30,825 nucleotides of DNA from NCBI RefSeq assembly GCF_006345805.1, contig NW_021832901.1, forward strand, positions 1 through 30,825. The letters are read 5' to 3'. Shown here piece after piece: positions 1 through 30,582 of this stretch (positions are counted from its first letter, which is position 1; every line of letters begins with the position of its first letter). Below the pieces are notes generated by a model. That model did not search any database. It was given only the letters and a program-made list of their open reading frames with translations, and was not told the DNA's origin. A program made the translations under genes and the position numbers. The DNA is from Octopus sinensis. Its lineage: Eukaryota.

Positions 1-1787
1 TTAATAAAATGAGAAAATGATAAAATATATAAATGTATATTTATTCAACCGGTTTTCGTCATTGTATGACTTGTCAGAATATTTATGTTTTAAGAAGTTT
101 TTTAAAAATTAGAAAGGGGAAAAAAAGAAAATTGCATTGTTTTTGTAAAAGAATAATGATAAAATGTACAAAATTAAAAAATAAGTTCTCCGATACATGT
201 GAGTTCGTTGTGTATCTTGCGTTTTAATGGTTGTTTACGAAAAAATTACCTTGAGGTGTTAAGATCCAAGAGATTAAGAGCATGTGTTGTGTGTGTTGTT
301 AAATTCGCATGTTTGCAGGACAGGAAGTAGTAGTAATTGTGGTCCTGGTTCTTCAGTTCCTGTGTTGTGAGTAAGGGGAGACAACTCTTTTGAGTTCTTC
401 AATAAAACCCAAATTATAAAACTATCATTTTAGCTTCATTTGCATTATCTTTTTTATATAATTGCTTGTTAACTTAACTTTCAGATTTTAACACTTTATT
501 TACATTATTTTCTAATAATATAAATCTGCATAGACAATTGCATTTCAAATTGTCATATCATTTATAATAAAAATGATAGTAATAACAACAATAGTAAAAA
601 TGATATTTAAAGAATATAGTTTTAGCTTGAAGTGATGAATGCATGGTATCTTTATATTTGTGTTAGTCCATCCATGAGAGTGAGGTAGAGAAAGGAAGTT
701 TGATCAACGAGGAGTTTGCATATTAAGTTGTGTTTGGAATTTTTAATAAAGAGATTCTCCTTGTTATTCTCTCCTGTGTGGTGATCCCGTCTTTACATTG
801 GTAGAAGGGGAATATATAGAATTTGGGGTTTAGAGTCTTTAGCACATGAGTCTAAGTGGTCACTCAGTGGAATTTGTCGGTATTCCGGGAGATTTATTTG
901 TTCTTTATGCACCGTTACTCGTTTACGTAAACGAGTAACGGTGCATAAAGAACAAATAAATCTCCCGAATACCGACAAATTCCACTGAGTGGCCACTTAG
1001 ACTCATGTGCTAAAGACTTAAACCCCAAATTCTATATATTCCCCTTCTACCAATGTAAAGACGGGATCACCACACAGGAGAGAATTAACAACTTCCTTTC
1101 TCTACCTCACTTTTCATGGATGGACTAACACAAATATATAAAGATACCATGCATTCATCACTTCAAGCTAAAACTTATATCTTTAAATATCATTTTTACT
1201 ATTGTTGTTATTACTATCATTTTATTATAATGATATGACAATTTGAAATGTAATTGTCTATGCAGATTTATATTATTAGAAAATAATGTAAATAAAGTGT
1301 TTAAATCTGAAAGTTAGTTAACAAGCAATTATATAAAAAGATAATGCAAATGAAGCTAAAATGATAGTTTTAATTTGGGTTTTATTGAAGAACTCAAAAG
1401 AGTTGTCTCCCCTTACTCACACACAGGAACTGAAGAACCAGGACCACAATTACTACTACTTCCTGTCCTGCAAACATGCTGAATTTAACAACAACACACA
1501 CATGCTCTTAATCTCTTTGGATCTTAACACCTCAAGGTAATTTTTTCGTAAACAACCATAAAACGCAAGATACACAACGACTCACAATGTATCGGAGAAC
1601 TTATTTTTTAATTTTGTACATTTTTATCATTATTCTTTTACAAAAAACAATGCCAATTTTCTTTTTTCCCCTTTCTAATTTTTAAAAAACCTTCTTAAAA
1701 CATAAATATTCTTGACAAGTCATACAATGACGAAAACCGGTTGAATAAATATACATTTTATATTTTATCATTTTCTCATTTTATTAA
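1..1787. repeat. Large spacer-less inverted repeat (palindrome) centred at 926/927; left arm runs off the window start
   Basis: Centre reads ...CACCGTTACTCGTTTAC|GTAAACGAGTAACGGTG... with no loop. Bases 1-10 (TTAATAAAAT) pair with 1778-1787. Arms differ mostly by 1-nt indels plus a ~60 nt block (about 701-761) missing from the right arm. Confidence 0.95.
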
Positions 1788-1836
1788 AATTTTCTTTCAT
1801 TTGAGCTTGTGCAATTTAAAAAAAAATTTTTCCTTA

Positions 1837-2135
<299 letters not shown>

Positions 2136-2393
2136 AAACTGTAACGTAGCTCAGATCCTGAAAGGAAGTTACAAGAATAACAATTAAACATCAACAACAA
2201 CGTCGAAAATAACGATATGTCTTACATTGCTGCAGGAAATTACAGATTTAACCGGAAAAAAAGACAATAAGAATTATGTTTAAAAATTAAATCAACTTTT
2301 TAAACAGTCAATGACTTCAACGTAATTGTTGTTATAACAGAAAATAGAATTATGAAAAAAAATAGAGAGAAAATGCAGCAGAAAATATGTCAC

Positions 2394-3135
2394 CACGTGA
2401 CGGAAAGTAAAGTGAAAATACAGAGGAATATTTTTTTAAATGGATTCACATTCAAATATGTTGTAAAATGATGCAGAGATAGAAAGAAAAAAAGACTTAC
2501 AATGACGTCACGTTTCCAAAGAGGAAGTGAAGAGTTATGGCAGTGAAAATGCATTAAAATCGAACCGGAAGTAAAATAGTAAAATATCACTTTCCTCCTG
2601 CATCAGTGTAAAATGGAGATCATTCATATATAGAATATATAATCACACACCACACACAACACACACGTGTGTGTGCTCTGTATGTATACACATATACATA
2701 TATACATTATAGCTTATATAATAGATTATAATTATATATATATATATATATATCTAATATATATATATATATTATATATATATATATATACATACATACA
2801 TACTACTACATACATATATATATATAATATACATATATATAATATATATATATATATATATTGACTATATATAAATATAATATATATATATATATATGAA
2901 TATTTATACATATATATATTACATAAAATATATAATATATACATATATGAATATCAATATATATATACATATATATGTATATTTACGTATATTTACACAT
3001 ACACTTGCGTAATATATATACATGTATATGTGTGTCGCCTCCATTTTTTTTGACCGGAAGTGAAAGAACGAGAATAGTAACTTCTTATGACAAGGCGTAA
3101 ATGCAAAAAGTGAAGCATTCATTCGAACCGGAAGT
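2394..3135. promoter_or_regulatory. Possible cis-regulatory cluster: 3x ETS motif ACCGGAAGT, CRE, E-box
   Basis: ACCGGAAGT at 2564-2572, 3053-3061 and 3127-3135; TGACGTCA at 2503-2510; CACGTG at 2394-2399. Motif matches only, no functional evidence. Confidence 0.3.
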
Positions 3136-3429
3136 GAGAGTGGGAGAAATAGGTAGAGAAAAAATATTACTATCCAGAAAGAAGTAAAAGCGATAAGCGG
3201 AAATAAAAAAGAAACAGAATGAAAAGTTCGTCACATTCCGATGCAGACGACCCAAAATAGAAAGAGTTGGAGAAGGAAACATGAAACGTGCAAATGTATT
3301 TATGTTATGTCAAACATTGTTTTTCGGTTCTTGCTTTCATTTTGTTTTTTGCTTTCCTAAGTATATCACGGCACACTTTATTTATCTCTTCGTTTGTAAA
3401 CGAATTAACGAAATGGTAAATACAAATGC

Positions 3430-3467
<38 letters not shown>

Positions 3468-3817
3468 ATGTATATGTGTGTGTGTGTGTGTGTGGTGGTG
3501 TGTGTGGTGTGTGTATGTATGTACGTATGAGTAAATATTCGTGGTTGCAATCGTTGACTGAAATACTGGAAAACAAATAAAACAAATGTGTGTATGTATG
3601 TGTGTGTTTGTGTGTGTGTGTGAGTGTTTGTGTGCGCGTGTGCTCATACGTGTATGTGTGAGTGTGTGCGTGCGTGTGTTGTGTGTTGTGTGTGTGTGTT
3701 TAAGTATGTGAATTGTTGTCTGATATCGTCTGAGAGACATTAGAACATGCGTGTGTTTGCTTGTTTGCATGCGTTCGTATATGAGTTTGTGTATGTGTGA
3801 AAAAGAGAGAATAGAGT

Positions 3818-3850
<33 letters not shown>

Positions 3851-3868
3851 GAAGAGTGAGGGAAAAGC

Positions 3869-3900
<32 letters not shown>

Positions 3901-3916
3901 GAAGAGTGAGGGAAAA

Positions 3917-3959
<43 letters not shown>

Positions 3960-4443
3960 AAAGAGCTCCATTAATTCATGCATGATGTATTGTTGACAAA
4001 CCAATCGGCGAGTATTGCGATGAGGTTAATACCCTCCACGCTGCAAATGATTTGAGACCTTTTAGGGAAATGATGGCTGATTCAAAGCATGCAAATAGTA
4101 GCGTATTTGTTTGCAACATAATGCACTGCATCTAAGCTTTATATAATAATATATATATGATACATATACATATATATATATATTGCCCACGCTTCCTGAT
4201 GAATTCCTTTGCTGTAGAGTAAGGGACTTCATCCTATATTGCTTAGTAGTAAACTCGATGCTTGCTACAGGAGGACTGGTAACCATTACAATTTGTAGCG
4301 GCGAAAGGTCTGGACGTTGTTTTCTGAGGCTGACCAAAGAATTTTTATTTTTAGATATAAGTGATGTACTCAAGTGTAGTTATGTTTTTAGCTTGTGCTT
4401 TTTCCATGATCATACGTGAGTATTTATTTATATCCCATCGAAA

Positions 4444-4511
4444 GTTATCTACTGAAGAAGGATATCTTTTTTTATAAGATTAAGTCGAAATTGATTCAAT
4501 ATAGAGATAAC
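4444..4511 (+). ncRNA. Type I hammerhead ribozyme-like motif, copy 1
   Basis: Stem I 5' GTTATCTA (4444-4451); core CTGAAGA (4452-4458); stem II region; GAAA (4487-4490); stem III ATTG-att-CAAT; H17=A4501; stem I 3' TAGA[GA]TAAC (4502-4511), 8 bp with a 2-nt bulge. The stem II base is weak in this copy (GG/TC). Confidence 0.55.
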
Positions 4512-4636
4512 GAAATTTAAAAATTTTCTAAAGGTTAGTTGCCCGTTTTCAGTTTCAATTTTCCTGTAACAAGCGGATTATAAGTGGATAAAACAGTGTA
4601 TTTGGCTTTAGAATAACCCTCTTAGCCATTATTATA

Positions 4637-4704
<68 letters not shown>

Positions 4705-5134
4705 GTGTGGGTGTGTGTGTGTGTGGTGTGTGTGTGTTTATGTATGTACGTATGAGTAAATATTCGTGGTTGCAATCGTTGACTGAATACTGGAAAAAAA
4801 TAAAACAAATGTGTGTATGTATGTGTGTGTTTGTGTGTGTGTGTGAGAGTGTTTTGTGCGCGTGTGCTCATACGTGTATGTGTGAGTGTGTGCGTGCGTT
4901 GTTGTGGTTGTGTGTGTGTGTTTAAGTATGTGAATTGTTGTCTGATATCGTCTGAGAGACATTAGAACATGCGTGTGTTTGCTTGTTTGCATGCGTTCGT
5001 ATATGAGTTTGTGTATGTGTGAAAAGAGAGAATAGAGTGAGAAGATAGAGAGAGAGAGAGAGAGAGAGAGGAAGAGTGAGGGAAAAGCAGAGAGAGAGAT
5101 AGAGAGAGAGAGAGAGAGGAAGAGTGAGGGAAAA

Positions 5135-5172
<38 letters not shown>

Positions 5173-5654
5173 AAAAAGAGCTCCATTAATTCATGCATGA
5201 TGTATTGTTGACAAACCAATCGCGAGTATTGCGATGAGGTTAATACCCTCCACGCTGCAAATGCTTTTGAGACCTTTTAGGGAAATGATGGCTGATTCAA
5301 GCATGCAATAGTAGCGTATTTGTTTGCAACATAATGCACTGCATCTAAGCTTTATATAATAATATATATATATGAACATATACATATAGATATATATTGC
5401 CCACGCTTCCTGATGAATTCCTTTGCTGTAGAGTAAGGGACTTCATCCTATATTGCTTAGTAGTAAACTCGATGCTTGCTACAGGAGGACTGGTACCATT
5501 ACAATTTGTAGCGGGCGAAAGTCTGGACGTTGTTTTCTGAGGCTGACCAAAGAATTTTTATTTTTAGATATAGTGATGTACTCAAGTGAGTTATGTTTTT
5601 AGCTTGTGCTTTTTCCATGATCATACGTGAGTATTTATTTATATCCCATCGAAA

Positions 5655-5722
5655 GTTCTACTGAAGAAGGATATATCTTTTTTTATAGATTAAGTCCGAA
5701 ATTGATTCAATATAGAGATAAC
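5655..5722 (+). ncRNA. Type I hammerhead ribozyme-like motif, copy 2
   Basis: CTGAAGA (5661-5667), A, stem II base GGA/TCC (5669-5671 with 5695-5697), GAAA (5698-5701), stem III ATTG-att-CAAT, H17=A5712, stem I TTCTA/TAGAG (5 bp including one G-U). Confidence 0.6.
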
Positions 5723-5846
5723 GAAATTTAAATTTTCTAAAGGTTAGTTGCCCGTTTTCAGTTTCAATTTCCTGTAACAAGCGGATTATAAGTGGATAAA
5801 ACAGTGTATTTGGCTTTAGAATAACCCTCTTTAGCCATTAATTATA

Positions 5847-5890
<44 letters not shown>

Positions 5891-6009
5891 ATATATGTCT
5901 ATACTCCCACACACACGTGTGTGTATGTGTGTGTATGAGCGTGTGTGTGTGTGCTGCGCGCGCGCGTGTACATACATCCATTCATTAATACATACGTATA
6001 TGAGCTACC

Positions 6010-6152
6010 GTTTCATTCTTTGGACTGTGGATCGTCCATGAAGAGTTTCGTCGAACGAATCAAGCCCAGGATTTATATTTTTTTTTACGCTTTATACTTG
6101 TTCTGTCAGTCACTTTTGTCAAACGGCTAAGTTACGGGGACACAAACAAACC
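6010..6152 (-). mobile_element. SINE fragment (same family as 25813 and 29770)
   Basis: Shares CCCAGGA.TTAT and GCTAAGTTACGGG blocks with the 29770-29962 copy. Confidence 0.65.
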
Positions 6153-6168
6153 AATATATAATATATAC

Positions 6169-6338
6169 GATGGGCTTCTTTCAGTTTCCGTCTACCAAAT
6201 TCACTCACAAGTCTTCAATCAGCTTGGGACTCTAGTAGATGATACTTGCCTAAGGTGCCTCGCTGCGAGATGTGAGACTGAACCTGGAACCATGTGGTTG
6301 GCAAGTAAACCACGCACCACATACCCACCCATGCGCCT
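6169..6338 (-). mobile_element. tRNA-derived SINE (same family as 30426)
   Basis: Plus strand GGGCTTCTTTCAGTTTCC...CTTGCCTAAGGTGCC...GACTGAACCTGGAACCATGTGGTTG matches 30426-30582. The reverse strand has a B-box-like GGTTCAGTC. Confidence 0.75.
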
Positions 6339-6834
6339 ATATATTTGTGTGTGTGTCTTTTTGTCTGTCTGTATGAAACATCTAGATATCATTTACACAA
6401 ACTAACTTACATATATGTTCATACCATTGTTCAGTCTAACCTTGTCACATGGTGTCGCATTAGTTCTGCATGAGAATTATATATTTAATATACATGTGGC
6501 TTCAGAGCACTTAGCCGTCCATACTTTAGTTCCACGGTTAAATGTGGTTTCAGAGTACATGTTAGTTCCACGTTAGTTCCATGGTTACGAACTAAGTTGG
6601 CAGAACAGCTTCAATGGTCTTTGGTGAAACTGACACAGAATCCACCGATATCTATGCATGCGTGTGTCTGTGTCTGTGTCTGCGTATAGTATACTAAAAG
6701 TAGATATATCGTTTAAAGCCTGTTAAACTGAGGTATTAGTCTCGAAAAGTATCTCTTATAGATGCATAGCGTCAAGAAACATAGCAATATATCAGCAGCA
6801 GACGAAAGTGCGTTCACCTGTGCCCCATGTCTTG

Positions 6835-7197
6835 CTAAATACGTATTTCTACTTCATTTATCCTCGTCAAGAGCAGGTGTCCATCCACCACCAGCTGCAT
6901 GCTAAGAGAAAATCACCAACTACTGATATAGTAAAACATTGATTAAAAAATCGCTGACGTCACAATTAGTTGGCAGGCTGGGTAAACATTCTCTATTAGC
7001 AATGAAGTTGTTTTAAATAGCAATCTGCATAACATACTTCAAGTAGATATATCGCTGAAAGCCTGCTGAGCTGATTCTCCACAGTTTGTACAGTCTACGT
7101 AGCTGTAAAAAACATACACGACTCGGGATCCTGGATAAGAATGCTGGAACAAGAACGTTAACCAACTCAGTGCCATTCTGAAGGTACAGACACGCTC
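6835..7197 (-). CDS. Candidate terminal exon region of the mGluR gene (three alternative phase-2 acceptors, none proven)
   Basis: Acceptors giving exon starts at 7197 (R-SVSVPSEWH*), 7102 (S-YVDCTNCGESAQQAFSDIST*, after ATGTTTTTTACAG) and 6901 (S-MQLVVDGHLLLTRINEVEIRI*, after TTTTCTCTTAG). This is the first non-repetitive stretch with good acceptors downstream of the 7TM exon. Confidence 0.25.
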
Positions 7198-7317
7198 CTG
7201 TGGCATTCATGCATTGCCAAAGCAGATTAGCAACGTAAATTTTCATGGATATGTATGTATGCATATATGTATGTATGTATGTATGTATGTATTATGTATG
7301 TATGCATATGTATGTAT

Positions 7318-7395
<78 letters not shown>

Positions 7396-7831
7396 TGTTC
7401 TTTTTACTAAATTCTGATGGAACTGGAAAAAAAAACGAAAAGAAGGTGAGCAAGACATTCACGGAAAGAATAGGTTCAGCGATTCTTGGAATCAGCAACC
7501 GAAACAACGATAATCATATCAAGTATGTGTGTGTGGGTATATGTATATATATGTATGTATGTATATGCATGTATACGCTGAGTTCTTTGGGGATGTTTTC
7601 TATAGTAATATTAAAACAATATTTTAGATGGATGTCATAACGGATGCAGCAAAAATACAAGGCAAAGAAATGCATCATTTCATTCGATTTTTGTGGCTTG
7701 TTTTGTAAAGAGAAAGAAAAAAACATTCGAAGGCGAATGAAAAAAGAAAATGAAAGAAAAGATCAAAGAAGCTGCTTCGATTTATAGCTTTTCTATTGAT
7801 TGGCATCGAGCAAATCAAAGAAGGAGAAATA

Positions 7832-7902
<71 letters not shown>

Positions 7903-8110
7903 ATGTATGTATAATGTGTCTGTGTGCGTGTGCGTGTGCGTGTGTATGCGTGGTTGTATGTATGGTATTAGTGTGTGGTGTGGTGTTGTGTATACGTTCA
8001 ATCGTTCCCGAATGAAACACTCACCCAAACGGATCCTTTCGTCCGGTGAAATCCCTAGAAAAATTTGAAGATGTGGAAGAAGAATAAGAATAAATTCAAT
8101 AAAAAAGAAT

Positions 8111-8169
<59 letters not shown>

Positions 8170-8200
8170 ATATATATATATATATATTAATATATATATG

Positions 8201-8234
<34 letters not shown>

Positions 8235-8649
8235 CATGTATTATATATACATATATATACATATATATACATGTATATATATACATATATATACATATAT
8301 ATACATATATATATATACATGTATATATATACTATATATACATATATATAAATGTATATATATATACATATATATACATATATATGTAAAATATATATAG
8401 ATACATATACATATATATATACATATATACATACATATAACATATATATACATATATATATATATATATATCTATATATATATATATGCATATTATATAT
8501 TTTATATGTATATATTATATATATGCTATATATATATATATATATATGTGTGTGATATATATATATGCATATATGCATATATAATCGGTCAGTTGTTTTT
8601 AAGTCCGAAAAGCACTCTCTAAAATAAACTTTTTTGAGCATTAATATTT

Positions 8650-9480
8650 TATGTAGACGTTGATTATGGCAGGTCAGAAAATTATTGATTCCATGTATGT
8701 TATGCTGTTAGCCACATGGGTGACCAACTAGACTTGCTGGCCGCAGGCACATTACCCCTTTTCCAATGGAGGTAATACGGTCTTGGTGAGCAAAGTTGTG
8801 AAGAAAATCCCTGAAACAAAATTCTTCTAACTGAATATCCTTTTTAGGTGAGAGGGTACTGTTTCCCTTAGAACGGTTCCAATTGTGTCCTAAAAAGGTC
8901 AGTTTATGTACGATTACCAGTTAGTTGTCAGCAAGCGTGAAAATCCATGTCTTCAACACGAATTTTCTTTCATGAAGGCACCAACTAAATACTTCACTTT
9001 TGGAATTTAAGAAGGTCCTTGGATCGAGCGAATTTTTTCGGATCTTTGCCCTCTTGGCCAAGCAAAGTCTGCATCATCTGCTTTCGTTGTGTCTATTAAA
9101 TAATCGTCCTAGATGATTATTTAATAGATACGAATTTGGGTTTATTCAGCTTTCATGTAGGGTTAACAGTGAATGCCCAGTAAGCGGTGATGCATCTGTG
9201 TCAATGAATGATATTGAATGTATTGATTGTGATGGGAGGGGGGATTATTTGAATGGATTTCATCAAGTGGTAATACTTGTGACAGTGACCCTCACAGATC
9301 TTCTGATATTGGGGAGATTAATGTGTAACTTGAATAGATGTAAGAATAAACGGGGTTGGGAAATGAATTCCAGTGGGACAGTATCTTTGAGAGAAAAGAC
9401 AGGTTCACTGGACTGGAATGATTAGAGAAAATGGGTGACGGGAAGATGAATAACAGCTGGGATTTGGTCTTGCTCACTGA
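8650..9480 (-). mobile_element. Decayed LTR/DIRS-type reverse transcriptase remnant
   Basis: Across frameshifts and stops the minus strand gives QYHSLTQ..SP, then *DDYLI (YxDD-like, near 9105) and LTFLGH (near 8890), in the order expected for the RT palm and thumb. Confidence 0.4.
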
Positions 9481-9601
9481 TTAAGGAATTCATCCACAGG
9501 GCGTTAAGGAGTCGTACATACTGTTATTATTAGTGAAGGTCGTGGCGGGATTGAGGGTTTCTAATTTAGGCAGAAAACCGGCAGTTTTGAGGGGCGGGGA
9601 T

Positions 9602-9712
9602 GGTTTAGTCGGTTACATCACATTGAGTCGCGGTACATGACTGGTACTTCATCTGATCGACCTAATAAGGATGAAAGGCAAAGTCAACTTTGGCGGCATT
9701 TGAACTCAAAAA
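9602..9712 (-). mobile_element. tRNA-derived SINE fragment
   Basis: GGATGAAAGGCAAAGTCAAC.TTGGCGGCATTTGAACTC is the reverse complement of the B-box/body of the copy at 15275. Confidence 0.75.
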
Positions 9713-9713
9713 T

Positions 9714-9757
<44 letters not shown>

Positions 9758-10078
9758 ATATTATATTATATATATATATATATATATACATATATGTGTA
9801 ATGTAATATTGTATATATTATATATATATATAATTATATATATATAATAATATGCATATACATCAATATATATGTTTATATATATACATACATATGTGTA
9901 TATCTGTATATACATACATATACATTGCATACGGATATATATATATATATATAGTCTATATATATATATATACACGTGTATATTTGTATATATATATATA
10001 TAAATATATATATATGTATATATACATACATAGTTACGAACACCACACGCACAACCACACACATGACATACGTACACT

Positions 10079-10182
<104 letters not shown>

Positions 10183-10263
10183 CATATACATATGGACATA
10201 GACGCAAACATAAACGCAGCCATGTACCCGCACACATAAATGTATATGCTATACGATACCAAC

Positions 10264-11161
10264 CTGTAGCCATCGAGGCTGTCACTCGAACTAAAGGATC
10301 TACCCGTGTTTCCAATATGACATCTGACATCTTTAGACGTTGTGAACGCACTGCGCGTGTTTTTCTCCGGGCAGTAGATGATGATGTAGACTTTGGGGAA
10401 GAAGAGCAGCACAAGGGCGACAATTGCTGAAAGACTGACGGACACACACATGGTGAATACTTTGCTCTCACTCTCGAAATAAATGGGCAAGAAACCAAGC
10501 CAGATCACACAAGTCGTATACATTGTAAATCCAATGAATTTGGCTTCGTTGAAGTTTTCCGGCAAGTTACGAGTCTTTACGGCGTATAACGTACACATCA
10601 TTATTAAAAACAGATCGAATCCTAGAGGTACTATTGTGCCAGCGGGACTGGTATTACAGAGAAGGATGACGCGTTTTTCGGTTGGATAGTAAAATGTAGA
10701 GTCAGCCGGTTCAATAACCAGCATTACTGTTATAATAGTTGATTCGATTCCAATTAACAGACATGTGATAACAACCTGAGCCGAAGCACTCATGAAACGG
10801 GGTTTCTTGGTCATTATTTTTTTGCTGCCTTCTAAAATGCGGGCAATTCGGTTGGTTTTCGTGACTAGGGCTCCGTAAATACAGGCGAAAGATAGGCCGG
10901 GTATGATGCGTGTGAAATAACAGCTGACGATTGTCGGTTTGGCAACTAGCACAAAGTTTGAGGTCAGTGCAAAGATAATCCCACCCAGTATAATATAACT
11001 GAGTTCTCGGGTGGATGCCTTCACTACTGGGGTGTCGTTGTAACGGATGAATACTACACCGACGAAACAGGTCGTTAAGATTCCGATGCAGGCCATAGCA
11101 ATGGCGATGATAGCCTCCGTGAAGTGCCAGCTCATGTGTTCGATTCTTATCATGCGGCAGG
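10264..11161 (-). CDS. GRM1/GRM5-like: Group I metabotropic glutamate receptor, 7TM exon (898 nt, phase 1 to phase 2)
   Basis: Acceptor TCTCTTTGCAG|CC; donor TACAG|GTTGGT. Encodes class C motifs [12 protein letters not shown]...[26 protein letters not shown] and the group I signature RSAFTTSxxVRxHxG. Confidence 0.97.
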
Positions 11162-12835: not shown

Positions 12836-12997
12836 ACCTATTTGCATATGTCTATCTCTCTACCTCACTGTTGCTAAAGAAATAGCTGACATTTATTCAT
12901 AGGCCGAAGGAAGATTGTAAAATGTAGAAATGATGAAAGAGAATCAAAAATAATGAAAGTTTGAGGATAAAATGTTTCGCTAGGGGGCAGCACCTAC

Positions 12998-13124
12998 CTG
13001 TGAGGTTAGTGTTTGGCCACCAGCCTTTACTACAGGCTTTGCAACGAGATTCATCCAGAAGTATTTCGTTCGGTTCACATTGAGTACAAGTCCAGCAGCA
13101 GGTCGTTCTTCCCGCATGGGTTTT
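12998..13124 (-). CDS. GRM1/GRM5-like: mGluR cysteine-rich-domain exon (127 nt, phase 0 to phase 1)
   Basis: Acceptor GTTTCAG|AAA; donor ACAG|GTAGGT. Encodes KTHAGRTTCCWTCTQCEPNEILLDESRCKACSKGWWPNTNLT. Confidence 0.96.
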
Positions 13125-13416
13125 CTGAAACAGACAAACCACGTGATTCAAACAAACCACACACACACACACACCAACTATATTATATATATATATATAT
13201 ATATTATATTAGTATATATAGATATATATATGTATATATATCATATATTATATATATATATATATATAATATATATATAGTGATTATTATTATATTGAGA
13301 GGGAATATTATTCTAACTTACAGGGAAAAAATCATTTAGAAATACTAAATCAAATTTCACAAAATATATATAATATATATATATATATATCGATATATAT
13401 ATATTATTATATATAT

Positions 13417-13522
13417 AAATTAGAAAAAACCACCTTTTATCAAGTCAAAATGAACAATTAAATTACACCATCTAGAAAATTTCATATAATATATACTATA
13501 TATATATATATGTATATTATAT

Positions 13523-13558
<36 letters not shown>

Positions 13559-13577
13559 GTATATATATATATATATA

Positions 13578-13620
<43 letters not shown>

Positions 13621-13700
13621 TATATAAATTAGAAAAAAACCACCTTTTATCAAGTCAAAATGAACAATTAAATTACACCATCTAGAAAATTTCATATAAT
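13417..13700. repeat. Short tandem duplication (~75 nt unique unit twice) separated by a (TA)n tract
   Basis: AAATTAGAAAAAACCACCTTTTATCAAGTC...TTTCATATAAT at about 13417-13490 and 13626-13700. Confidence 0.9.
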
Positions 13701-13724
13701 AGAAATATTAATTAAAATAACAAT

Positions 13725-13762
<38 letters not shown>

Positions 13763-13930
13763 TATAATATATATATATGAGGAGATAATGGTGTCATTGA
13801 GACCCAAAGGTGTCAGGTAATGCTGAATAAGTGCTATAGACAGACCATAGTAAGTTCCAGATTCGGTAATATTGCGAACGTTGGTTCTATGTCACCGTGT
13901 GTATATAAGAATTTTTTGCGTAATGAAATT

Positions 13931-26136: not shown

Positions 26137-26191
26137 GAAACATAACTGGAAACATATAGAATGAAATCAATCATATTCGTTTTAATCTAAC

Positions 26192-26390
26192 CTTGATGAA
26201 ACCTTTCTGACACGGTTTACTGCACACTGATTCGATAACTTTGGTGATTCCTCGACCAACGGAAGGCCAGAAGATATTACTGTCGTTCATCTCAAGACGG
26301 CCATTATTCCAGGACCCTACCTTCACGTAGGCATATGTGGCATTTTCTTCACCGTCACTTTCGAATTGTTGGAAGTTCATTATATCATAT
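26192..26390 (-). CDS. GRM1/GRM5-like: mGluR exon, end of Venus flytrap domain and start of Cys-rich domain (199 nt, phase 2 to phase 0)
   Basis: Acceptor TTCTTTACAG|A; donor AAG|GTTAGA. Encodes YDIMNFQQ...YVKVGSWNNG...SVCSKPCQKGFIK. Confidence 0.96.
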
Positions 26391-26497
26391 CTGTAAAGAA
26401 AATAGAAAGAAAGGGAAGTGTTAATGGAGAACCGTATATACAAATCTCTCTTTCCATATCGGCCTCGCCGTCTCTCGTATTTCCCTTTCTATATATA

Positions 26498-29352: not shown

Positions 29353-29357
29353 CCTCT

Positions 29358-29427
<70 letters not shown>

Positions 29428-29571
29428 TATATATATATATATGTATTATATATACATATGCGTCGTTACGGGGCTGTGATATACATTGCAGGGATGTGAA
29501 TTATGTCGTCAGTATAATGTTAGGTCTGTTACTATAGTTGTGTGTATATATATATATATATATTATATAAT

Positions 29572-29617
<46 letters not shown>

Positions 29618-29635
29618 TATAATATATATTATATT

Positions 29636-29745
<110 letters not shown>

Positions 29746-29769
29746 ATATAATACTATATATTCTTTTTT

Positions 29770-29962: not shown

Positions 29963-30425
29963 GGGAGGAGGATAACACAAACATGCACACAGATATATGC
30001 ATATATATATATATCTATACAGTATGTTACATTACTCGGTAGTCAAGATAAAACTCTGAGTTTCAGATGCCGAAGTGGAAATCCACAACACCATCTCTTC
30101 GGTTATCTGGCTATTTGAAAACGTTATGAAAAAATACCGTTAAATAAAGGGAAATTACTCTGTTATAACTCTGCTTGCCTGCGTACTTATACATCGCTCG
30201 CATTTTTCGTCATAAAAAATTATATAAAAATACATTAAAAAATATATAAAAAATATATAAAAATTTATAAAAATATATAAATTCTTCTTGGGACATAACA
30301 CAGAAAGCATGTTCTATCTGTTTTCTTTAGGGGACCAAAAACGTAACAGAAATTTAGTCACATGTGGGCATGATCCGAAAAGCTCTGTCCTTGTATTTAG
30401 ACATGTAGTAGGGTATATATATATA

Positions 30426-30582
30426 CGACGGGCATCTTTCAGGTTTCCTTCCACCAAATCCACTCAAGGCATTGGTCAGCATGGGGCTATAGTAGAAGAC
30501 ACTTGCCCAAGGTGCCACGCAGTGGGACTGAACCTGGAGTCATATAGTTGGGAAGGAAGCTTCTTACGACTCAGCCACGCCT
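30426..30582 (-). mobile_element. tRNA-derived SINE (same family as 6169)
   Basis: CTATAGTAGAAGACACTTGCCCAAGGTGCCACGCAGTGGGACTGAACC; the reverse strand has a B-box-like GGTTCAGTCCC. Confidence 0.8.

What the first reader, a model, noticed from the sequence alone, without database searches (positions are those of the whole stretch)
4444..5722. Complete type I hammerhead ribozyme fold downstream of the glutamate receptor gene (two copies)
Seen: the two copies give a consensus GTTATCTA-CTGAAGA-A-GGA[~24 nt with ATCT/AGAT stem]TCC-GAAA-TTG-att-CAA-T-A-TAGA[GA]TAAC. Both core strands are intact, stem III is 4 bp with a tri-loop, stem I is 8 bp with a 2-nt bulge, stem II has a GGA/TCC base and the triplet is AUA. 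Each copy has one defect that the other corrects (copy 1 lacks a C in stem II, copy 2 lacks AT in stem I). Known: CUGANGA/GAAA/NUH with helix I open defines type I hammerheads; stem I bulges contact loop II; an extra A after the core is common in retroelement-linked hammerheads. Inference: a possibly active, unannotated self-cleaving RNA antisense to the mGluR locus.
Basis: partly seen in the sequence, partly recalled or inferred. Interest (0 to 1): 0.85.

Follow-up and report, generated by a model that had tools for sequence, protein, structure and literature searches.

The report
Hammerhead-like RNA motif, unproven, duplicated
The window holds a sequence with every conserved letter of a hammerhead self-cutting RNA, but it is one locus copied twice; no model, relative or covariation backs it, so it is more likely a lucky match in AT-rich DNA than a working ribozyme.

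Summary
It has the core CUGAAGA / GAAA / UA, an open helix I (type I) and three helices.

The two "copies" are not independent. They lie in a 2.08-copy tandem duplication of a ~1.22-kb, microsatellite-rich unit whose borders sit in (TA)n(TG)n tracts. In the unique part the copies differ by 2 substitutions and 21 mostly homopolymer-length indels, which looks like unpolished assembly noise. Four of those indels fall inside the motif. Only a hybrid of the two copies has all helices intact.

No Rfam hammerhead family matches, even at E<=10 on 106-nt slices.

In favour:
- The extra A after A9, G10.1-C11.1, the long helix II and the short helix I match published Penelope-like-element hammerheads.
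- A match with these hallmarks is expected by chance in fewer than about 1 in 1,400 windows, though still about 10-20 times per 2-Gb genome.

Against:
- A7, A17 and U15.2-A16.2 are the choices AT-rich chance favours.
- No reverse transcriptase lies nearby, and no second family member could be found.

My estimate is about 0.6 fortuitous and about 0.3 a genuine retroelement-type hammerhead. Even if genuine, it would be a new member of a known kind.

The parts
4444..4511 (+). Hammerhead-like motif, copy 1. Layout: helix I 5' 4444-4451; core CUGAAGA 4452-4458; extra A 4459; helix II 4460-4486 (its base is only G-C and G.U, because one C is missing compared with copy 2); GAAA 4487-4490; helix III 4490-4500; A17 4501; helix I 3' 4502-4511 (8 bp with a GA bulge).
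   Evidence: Sequence; descriptor scans.
5655..5722 (+). Hammerhead-like motif, copy 2. Layout: helix I 5' 5655-5660 (AT missing, so 5 contiguous pairs); core 5661-5667; extra A 5668; helix II 5669-5697 (GGAU/GUCC base, internal loop, AUCU/AGAU); GAAA 5698-5701; helix III 5701-5711; A17 5712; helix I 3' 5713-5722.
   Evidence: Sequence; descriptor scans.
3413..4635 (.). Tandem duplication, unit 1 (~1.22 kb). It runs (TA)n(TG)n, short unique stretches, (TG)n, (GA)n, then a ~680-bp unique part (3961-4640) that carries the motif about 130 bp from its end.
   Evidence: Self-BLAST; pairwise alignment; borders.
4636..5953 (.). Tandem duplication, unit 2, followed by a third (TA)n(TG)n-like tract. 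The overall layout is SSR-X-SSR-X-SSR, and the two A17 positions are 1211 nt apart.
   Evidence: Self-BLAST; pairwise alignment; borders.

Best explanation
A fortuitous hammerhead-like sequence in AT-rich, microsatellite-laden non-coding DNA, on the strand antisense to a class C (mGluR-type) receptor gene. One ~1.2-kb segment flanked by (TA)n(TG)n tracts is present twice. That arose either by unequal exchange or slippage between those tracts, or as an assembly duplication. The motif therefore appears twice, each time blurred by unpolished long-read indel errors. It has no ribozyme biology, although an RNA of the hybrid sequence might still cut itself slowly in a test tube, because any RNA that satisfies the hammerhead consensus can.

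Shown: the anatomy, the non-independence of the copies, the lack of any model or homology support, and the chance rates.
Inferred: that it is not maintained as a ribozyme.
For: 1. One locus, not two. The tandem units align at 93.9%, with 2 substitutions against 21 indel events in the unique part. A nearby inverted duplication shows the same profile, 3 against 24. The single-copy 7TM exon stays in frame over 900 nt.
2. Neither assembled copy passes an ordinary descriptor; only a hybrid does.
3. No hammerhead family of Rfam 15 matches at gathering score, at E<=10 on 1.4 kb, or on 106-nt slices. The only hammerhead-named hit is RAGATH-1 at 13.5 bits (gathering score 56.3), in a different register.
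4. A covariance model built from four ribozymes of PMC7229834 plus the Schistosoma one, run with filters off, does not list the motif among its 10 hits at E<=10 (below 6.9 bits). Unrelated sites score higher.
5. At the three free positions the motif has A7, A17 and U15.2-A16.2. That combination is about 10 times commoner among chance hits (3.3-3.5%) than U7/C17/C-G (0.25-0.4%). None of the five reference ribozymes has A7 or U-A, and one of the five has A17.
6. The architecture differs from the four published retrozyme ribozymes and the Schistosoma one, which have helix II of 4 bp (GC-rich in three of the four) with a 5-6-nt loop, GAAAC, and a short helix III with a palindromic loop.
7. The duplication borders lie in (TA)n(TG)n, about half of the unit is microsatellite, and no RT or endonuclease remnant lies within 1-9850.
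8. A genome of this size is expected to hold at most about 20 chance matches with the hallmarks and roughly 300-850 without them.
Against: - The chance of such a match in this one window is small: 0.5-1% without the hallmarks and at most about 0.03-0.07% with them.
- The extra nucleotide between A9 and 10.1, G10.1-C11.1, Y15.2-R16.2, the long helix II and the short helix I are exactly the features reported for Penelope-like-element hammerheads. Those are numerous in invertebrates, including shrimps.
- Two motifs in consecutive tandem units meets the operational definition of an 'active' non-LTR retrozyme used in 10.64898/2026.07.22.740005.
- The covariance models used represent canonical hammerheads and may simply miss this architecture.
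- The folding-energy argument I first made against the motif failed its control and is withdrawn.
Confidence: 0.6

Rival explanations
1. A genuine, retroelement-derived type I hammerhead of the Penelope-like-element / non-LTR-retrozyme kind, possibly a decaying relic of a non-autonomous copy. When the + strand is transcribed, the RNA would cut itself after A17, as a monomer or through a dimeric helix III (AUUGAUUCAAU is a palindrome apart from its central U).
For: - Complete core and type I topology.
- Hallmarks listed in PMC4209133: a nucleotide between 9 and 10.1, G10.1-C11.1, Y15.2-R16.2, helix II of 8-9 bp with an internal loop, and helix I of 4-5 contiguous bp.
- Chance rate with these hallmarks and >=13 bp: 0-3 hits per 600 Mb of simulated sequence, and 0 of 719 decoy cores on real sequence.
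- Low GC (36%) and a tandem arrangement, as in metazoan retrozymes.
- Penelope-like elements insert as partial tandems with a bias for microsatellites, including (TA)n.
- If each indel difference is resolved to the longer variant, all three helices are complete.
Against: - No covariance-model score.
- No second family member in the window or in any collection searched.
- No RT/EN open reading frame nearby.
- Helix III (4 bp plus an odd 3-nt loop) is larger than the 'small and palindromic' helix III described for metazoan Penelope-type hammerheads.
- A7, A17 and U-A are the chance-favoured choices.
- Half of the unit is microsatellite, and its borders are explained by SSR-mediated duplication.
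Confidence: 0.3
2. A working two-ribozyme retrozyme. A + strand transcript through both units is cut after A4501 and A5712. That releases a 1211-nt RNA with 5'-OH and 2',3'-cyclic phosphate ends, which a tRNA ligase (RtcB) closes into a circle. (This is a subset of the previous rival.)
For: - Two motifs in the same orientation in consecutive units, 1211 nt apart.
- Published ribozyme-flanked repeats give circles 'from 150 to >1000 nt'.
- The locus fits the operational retrozyme criterion.
Against: - The period is above the reported 51-972-bp range of consensus lengths.
- The would-be monomer is only weakly more structured than shuffles (z = -1.9, 62% paired), whereas retrozyme circles are described as highly self-paired.
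- There are only two units, and they are indistinguishable from one sequence read twice.
- No evidence of transcription is available.
Confidence: 0.05
3. This rival concerns the 'two copies' only and is compatible with any of the readings above. The tandem duplication may not exist in the animal at all. It could be an assembly artefact at microsatellites in a long-read assembly, so that there is a single motif.
For: - The copy differences are almost all 1-2-nt indels, mostly homopolymer length.
- A nearby inverted duplication shows the same pattern.
- The duplication borders lie in (TA)n(TG)n.
- The unique exon nearby is frame-intact, as expected if only multi-mapping regions escaped polishing.
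Against: A real, very young duplication would look the same in an unpolished assembly. Nothing here can separate the two.
Confidence: 0.35

Closest known systems
Hammerheads of Penelope-like elements (Cervera & de la Pena 2014, PMC4209133)
   Same: [quoted passage not shown]
   Different: Those lie in the pseudo-LTRs that flank an RT-GIY-YIG reading frame, or occur as thousands of dispersed copies forming families with covariation. They have no helix III or a tiny palindromic one. Here there is no RT/EN, no family could be shown, and helix III is 4 bp with an odd 3-nt loop.
Non-LTR retrozymes of metazoans (Cervera & de la Pena 2020, PMC7229834; 10.64898/2026.07.22.740005)
   Same: Type I hammerhead once per unit of a low-GC tandem repeat; at least two consecutive units; reported in crustaceans and insects.
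   Different: Their monomers are mostly 150-450 bp (51-972 bp at most). Their ribozymes are canonical: helix II of 4 bp with a 5-6-nt loop, GAAAC, GUC or GUA. They are often multi-copy and highly self-paired. Here the unit is 1.2 kb and half microsatellite, there are two units only, z = -1.9, and the ribozyme architecture is non-canonical.
Canonical type I hammerhead (Rfam Hammerhead_1 and clan; Schistosoma Sm-alpha)
   Same: Core CUGANGA / GAAA / UH and open helix I.
   Different: No Rfam hammerhead family matches at any threshold tried. The motif also has an extra A, a 20-23-nt insert in helix II, U15.2-A16.2, and no recognisable loop 1 / loop 2 pair.
False positives of relaxed hammerhead descriptors
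   Same: A single locus, AT-rich stems, the chance-favoured A7/A17/U-A, and no family. PMC6155905 notes that early searches with relaxed motifs gave mostly false positives.
   Different: This one keeps the strict core and also carries the 9/10.1 insertion with G10.1-C11.1, which chance rarely gives.

Membership tests
Hammerhead ribozyme (any type) | Conserved core C3 U4 G5 A6 N7 G8 A9 / G12 A13 A14 / A15.1-U16.1 / H17 | tested here: met
   Present in both copies: CUGAAGA, GAAA, A-U, A17.
Hammerhead ribozyme (any type) | Three helices around the core | tested here: inconclusive
   All three are complete only in a hybrid of the copies. Copy 1 has a 2-bp base of helix II, and copy 2 has 5 contiguous pairs in helix I. 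The assembly is unreliable at four indel sites.
Hammerhead ribozyme (any type) | Site-specific, Mg2+-dependent self-cleavage 3' of position 17 | not testable with these tools
   Needs in vitro transcription and mapping of the RNA ends.
Hammerhead ribozyme (any type) | Match to a curated covariance model (Rfam Hammerhead_1, _3, _II, HH9, HH10) | tested here: not met
   No hit at gathering score or at E<=10, even on 106-nt slices. My own model of five type I ribozymes, filters off, scores it below 6.9 bits.
Type I topology | Helix I open; helices II and III closed by loops; order I-core-II-GAAA-III-H-I | tested here: met
   Sequence order at 4444-4511 and 5655-5722.
Penelope-like-element hammerhead | Extra nucleotide between A9 and 10.1, followed by G10.1-C11.1 | tested here: met
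   A4459/A5668, then G...C. The feature is described in PMC4209133.
Penelope-like-element hammerhead | Large helix II (6-8 bp) and short helix I (4-5 bp) | tested here: inconclusive
   Helix II totals 8-9 bp but is broken by an internal loop and is AU-rich. Helix I has 4-5 contiguous bp, plus 4 more after a GA bulge in copy 1.
Penelope-like-element hammerhead | Palindromic 15.2-16.2 and loop 3; helix III absent or very small | tested here: inconclusive
   U15.2-A16.2 fits. AUUGAUUCAAU is a palindrome except for the central U, but helix III is 4 bp, larger than described.
Penelope-like-element hammerhead | Lies in a pseudo-LTR next to an RT-GIY-YIG reading frame, or belongs to a multi-copy family with covariation | tested here: not met
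   No RT/EN domain in reading frames of 1-9850. No other copy in the window. The source genome could not be searched.
Metazoan non-LTR retrozyme | Tandem repeat with a complete type I hammerhead in at least two consecutive units | tested here: inconclusive
   There are two units, each with a motif. But each motif has a weakened helix, and the units may be one sequence assembled twice.
Metazoan non-LTR retrozyme | Monomer of about 150-450 bp (51-972 bp reported) that is highly self-paired | tested here: not met
   The period is 1211-1222 bp. The monomer gives z = -1.9 and is 62% paired.

The most novel reading that the evidence does not exclude
The locus is a live, unusually large (1.2 kb) and microsatellite-rich two-ribozyme retrozyme of an arthropod-like genome. 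It would carry a Penelope-type hammerhead with a full helix III, be transcribed antisense to the 3' part of an mGluR-type gene, and release a 1211-nt linear and circular RNA.
Probability: 0.05. Interest if true: 0.5.

Novelty: new member of a known kind. Interest (0 to 1): 0.25.

Why it matters
If genuine, it adds one more hammerhead of the Penelope/retrozyme kind in an invertebrate genome. Thousands of these are already catalogued, so it would be useful for annotation but would not change what is known. A 1.2-kb circular RNA antisense to a neurotransmitter-receptor gene would be mildly interesting.

The more general lesson is methodological. Two copies inside a young or mis-assembled duplication are not replicate evidence. 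And 'each copy repairs the other's defect' is what unpolished long-read noise produces.

Tried and rejected
1. Folding energy as evidence against the motif.
- The hammerhead fold is not the minimum-energy fold, and z is -0.5 to -0.7.
- Only 1e-7 to 1.4e-3 of the ensemble is compatible with the hammerhead fold, for all 16 indel variants.
- I rejected this argument after a control. The coral, mussel and axolotl ribozymes tested in vitro in PMC7229834 give 4e-6 to 1.5e-3 in the same calculation. Only a Schistosoma construct with an artificial helix III gives 0.56.
- The competing hairpin UGAAGAAGG/UCUUUUUUUA is no stronger than helix II in copy 2 or in the hybrid.

2. Retrieving homologous non-coding DNA through the spurious reading frame 4062-4373(-). 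It has no homologue.

3. Exact 25-mer scans of the metagenome, viral and prokaryote genome collections. All gave 0 hits.

4. The orthologous position in the nearest relatives of the receptor exon.
- The best relative is only 77% identical in protein.
- Loci L001 and L002 (about 75% identical in protein) have no hammerhead-like motif and no similarity to the unit.
- This is uninformative at that distance.

5. A positive control for the Rfam tool, by fishing the coral and mussel ribozymes out of the collections. Both gave 0 hits.

6. The plain MAFFT alignment of the reference ribozymes mis-aligned GAAAC (A1). I replaced it with a length-equalised, N-padded alignment (A2).

I replaced it with stop-to-stop segments.

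8. A SINE or tRNA origin for the unit. No tRNA-like gene was found in 3300-6100.

9. A second hammerhead at CTGATGA 4196/5410. I inspected the sequence by eye and rejected it: the only GAAA lies about 100 nt downstream, and what follows lacks U16.1.

Full report
WHAT IS THERE

The motif is at 4444-4511 and 5655-5722 on the + strand. It reads helix I 5' strand, CUGAAGA, an extra A, helix II, GAAA, helix III (AUUG-AUU-CAAU), A17, helix I 3' strand. Helix I is the open one, so the topology is type I, and the coordinates of the predicted cleavage sites (after A4501 and A5712) are right. A search for CTGANGA finds 13 sites in the window, and only these two have a hammerhead context.

THE TWO COPIES ARE ONE OBSERVATION

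- Self-comparison shows that 3413-4734 aligns with 4636-5953 at 93.9%. This is 2.08 copies of a ~1.22-kb unit.
- The unit consists of (TA)n(TG)n, short unique pieces, more (TG)n, (GA)n, and a ~680-bp unique part that carries the motif about 130 bp from its end.
- Both ends of the duplication lie in (TA)n(TG)n tracts. The layout is SSR-X-SSR-X-SSR, the expected product of unequal exchange or slippage between flanking microsatellites, or of a mis-join in assembly.
- In the unique part the units differ by 2 substitutions and 21 indel events, mostly changes in homopolymer length.
- An inverted duplication at 1-700 / 1090-1787 shows the same profile, 3 substitutions against 24 indel events.
- The single-copy 7TM exon at 10254-11153(-) stays in frame for 900 nt and matches Pfam 7tm_3 end to end.
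- My inference is that the duplicated stretches escaped polishing and the two units are, within error, the same sequence.
- Four of the indel differences fall inside the 68-nt motif, so 'each copy corrects the other's defect' is what noise would produce. With an ordinary descriptor neither copy passes; only a hybrid does.

MODELS AND HOMOLOGUES

- No Rfam 15 family reaches its gathering score anywhere in the window.
- At E<=10, no hammerhead family appears on 1.4 kb or on 106-nt slices around each copy. The one exception is RAGATH-1-hammerhead at 13.5 bits (gathering score 56.3), aligned in another register.
With filters off it lists 10 sites at E<=10, none significant. The motif is not among them.
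- Both kinds of model describe canonical hammerheads and penalise the extra A and the 20-23-nt insert in helix II. The negative result is therefore real but not decisive.
- No homologue could be obtained. The adjacent spurious reading frame has no relative.
- Exact 25-mers are absent from the three DNA collections.
- The receptor exon's nearest relative is only 77% identical, and the named hits further down the list (65% or less) are arachnids and insects.
- Two relatives' loci show nothing downstream.
- The source genome is not in reach of these tools.

CHANCE

Markov-1 simulation of 400-600 Mb per composition:

| Descriptor | Expected per window |
|---|---|
| What the real copies satisfy | 0.006-0.009 |
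| The hybrid | 0.0003-0.0005 |
| Broad type I descriptor (recovers 3 of 4 verified ribozymes), >=13 bp | 0.009-0.013 (570-850 per 2-Gb genome) |

As a null that keeps real sequence structure, I ran 719 decoy cores of the same composition on 129 kb of real sequence. Forty-nine decoys give a broad hit, and 10 give one with >=13 bp. This agrees with the simulation.

WHAT CHANGED MY MIND HALFWAY

PMC4209133 reports features of hammerheads in Penelope-like elements that were not in the authors' descriptor:
- G10.1-C11.1;
- palindromic 15.2-16.2 and loop 3;
- a long helix II (6-8 bp, with a bulge in D. virilis);
- a short helix I (4-5 bp).

Such motifs are genome-wide in flies, rotifers, shrimps and mosquitoes.

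With these hallmarks added, chance gives 0-3 hits with >=13 bp per 600 Mb. That is at most 0.0003 per window and at most about 20 per 2-Gb genome. None of the 719 decoys reaches this.

Penelope-like elements also insert as partial tandems with a bias for microsatellites, including (TA)n. A 2026 preprint defines 'active' retrozymes simply as tandem repeats with complete hammerheads in two consecutive units.

WHAT PULLS THE OTHER WAY

- At the three free positions the motif has A7, A17 and U-A. That combination occurs in 3.3-3.5% of chance hits, against 0.25-0.4% for U7/C17/C-G. All five reference ribozymes have C15.2-G16.2, four have U7 and four have C17.
- Helix III (4 bp, odd loop) is larger than the 'small and palindromic' one of metazoan Penelope-type motifs.
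- No RT or endonuclease remnant lies in 1-9850.
- The period (1211-1222 bp) is above the reported 51-972 bp.
- The would-be 1211-nt product is barely more structured than shuffles (z = -1.9).
- SSR-mediated duplication explains the tandem without any mobile element.

A WITHDRAWN ARGUMENT

The hammerhead fold is not the minimum-energy fold, and it takes 1e-7 to 1.4e-3 of the ensemble in all 16 indel variants. However, the coral, mussel and axolotl ribozymes tested in PMC7229834 give 4e-6 to 1.5e-3 in the same calculation. Nearest-neighbour energies therefore do not discriminate here.

VERDICT

- The sequence feature is real and, for a single window, unlikely by chance. But it is one locus of uncertain exact sequence, with no model, family or covariation behind it.
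- Weighing a rough base rate of real hammerheads in invertebrate genomes against the chance rates, the atypical architecture and the chance-favoured free positions, I put about 0.6 on a fortuitous match. I put about 0.3 on a genuine Penelope/retrozyme-type hammerhead (including 0.05 for a working 1.2-kb circle-forming unit), and leave the rest open.
- The estimate rests mainly on a base rate I could not measure. A whole-genome count of true-core against decoy-core motifs would settle it.
- Either way it lies within a known kind. Interest is low to moderate.

Noticed in passing
window 1-700 and 1090-1787: An inverted duplication of ~700 bp (96% identity) with a 389-bp spacer at the very start of the window. 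The arms differ by 3 substitutions and 24 indel events, the same noise profile as the tandem duplication. It could be a young inverted repeat (a TE-type or Penelope-type inverted copy) or an assembly artefact at a contig end.
   Followed up: partly
window 10254-11153 (-), 12897-13172 (-), 26171-26443 (-): Exons of a class C GPCR of the metabotropic glutamate receptor type on the minus strand: 7tm_3 (E 2e-62) and two NCD3G pieces (E 1e-7 and 0.0025, both below Pfam's cut-off). The best database relative of the 7TM exon is only 77% identical. The named hits, further down the list at 65% or less, are arachnids and insects among the invertebrates, so the source species is not in the protein collection.
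   Followed up: partly
window 10254-11153 versus 3413-5953 and 1-1787: Sequence quality looks uneven. The unique exon is frame-intact over 900 nt, whereas duplicated stretches differ by about 3% indels. This suggests that polishing skipped multi-mapping regions, so any single-nucleotide reading in the duplicated parts is unsafe.
   Followed up: partly
window 13364-13570 and 13569-13778: A second, older tandem duplication of ~207 bp (89% identity; 11 substitutions and 10 indel events), just downstream of the NCD3G exon on the + strand.
   Followed up: no
window 6155-6308 / 30414-30558 and 8101-8519 / 29357-29769: Two dispersed repeat pairs: 77% identity in direct orientation and 80% in inverted orientation. 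The second pair is largely AT-rich simple sequence. They may be copies of short interspersed elements.
   Followed up: no
window 320-363 (-) and 1423-1466 (+): CUGAAGA flanked by a 6-bp inverted repeat (CAGGAA/UUCCUG) is the top hit of my type I model (11.2 bits, E 0.55). There is no GAAA strand, so it is not a hammerhead. It shows how easily half-motifs arise here.
   Followed up: yes
whole window: Extreme density of microsatellites ((TA)n, (TG)n, (GA)n, (GATA)n, (CTGT)n, (ATA)n), which generates many spurious low-complexity reading frames. Weak sub-threshold Rfam microRNA hits (mir-297, mir-1277) are caused by these tracts.
   Followed up: partly
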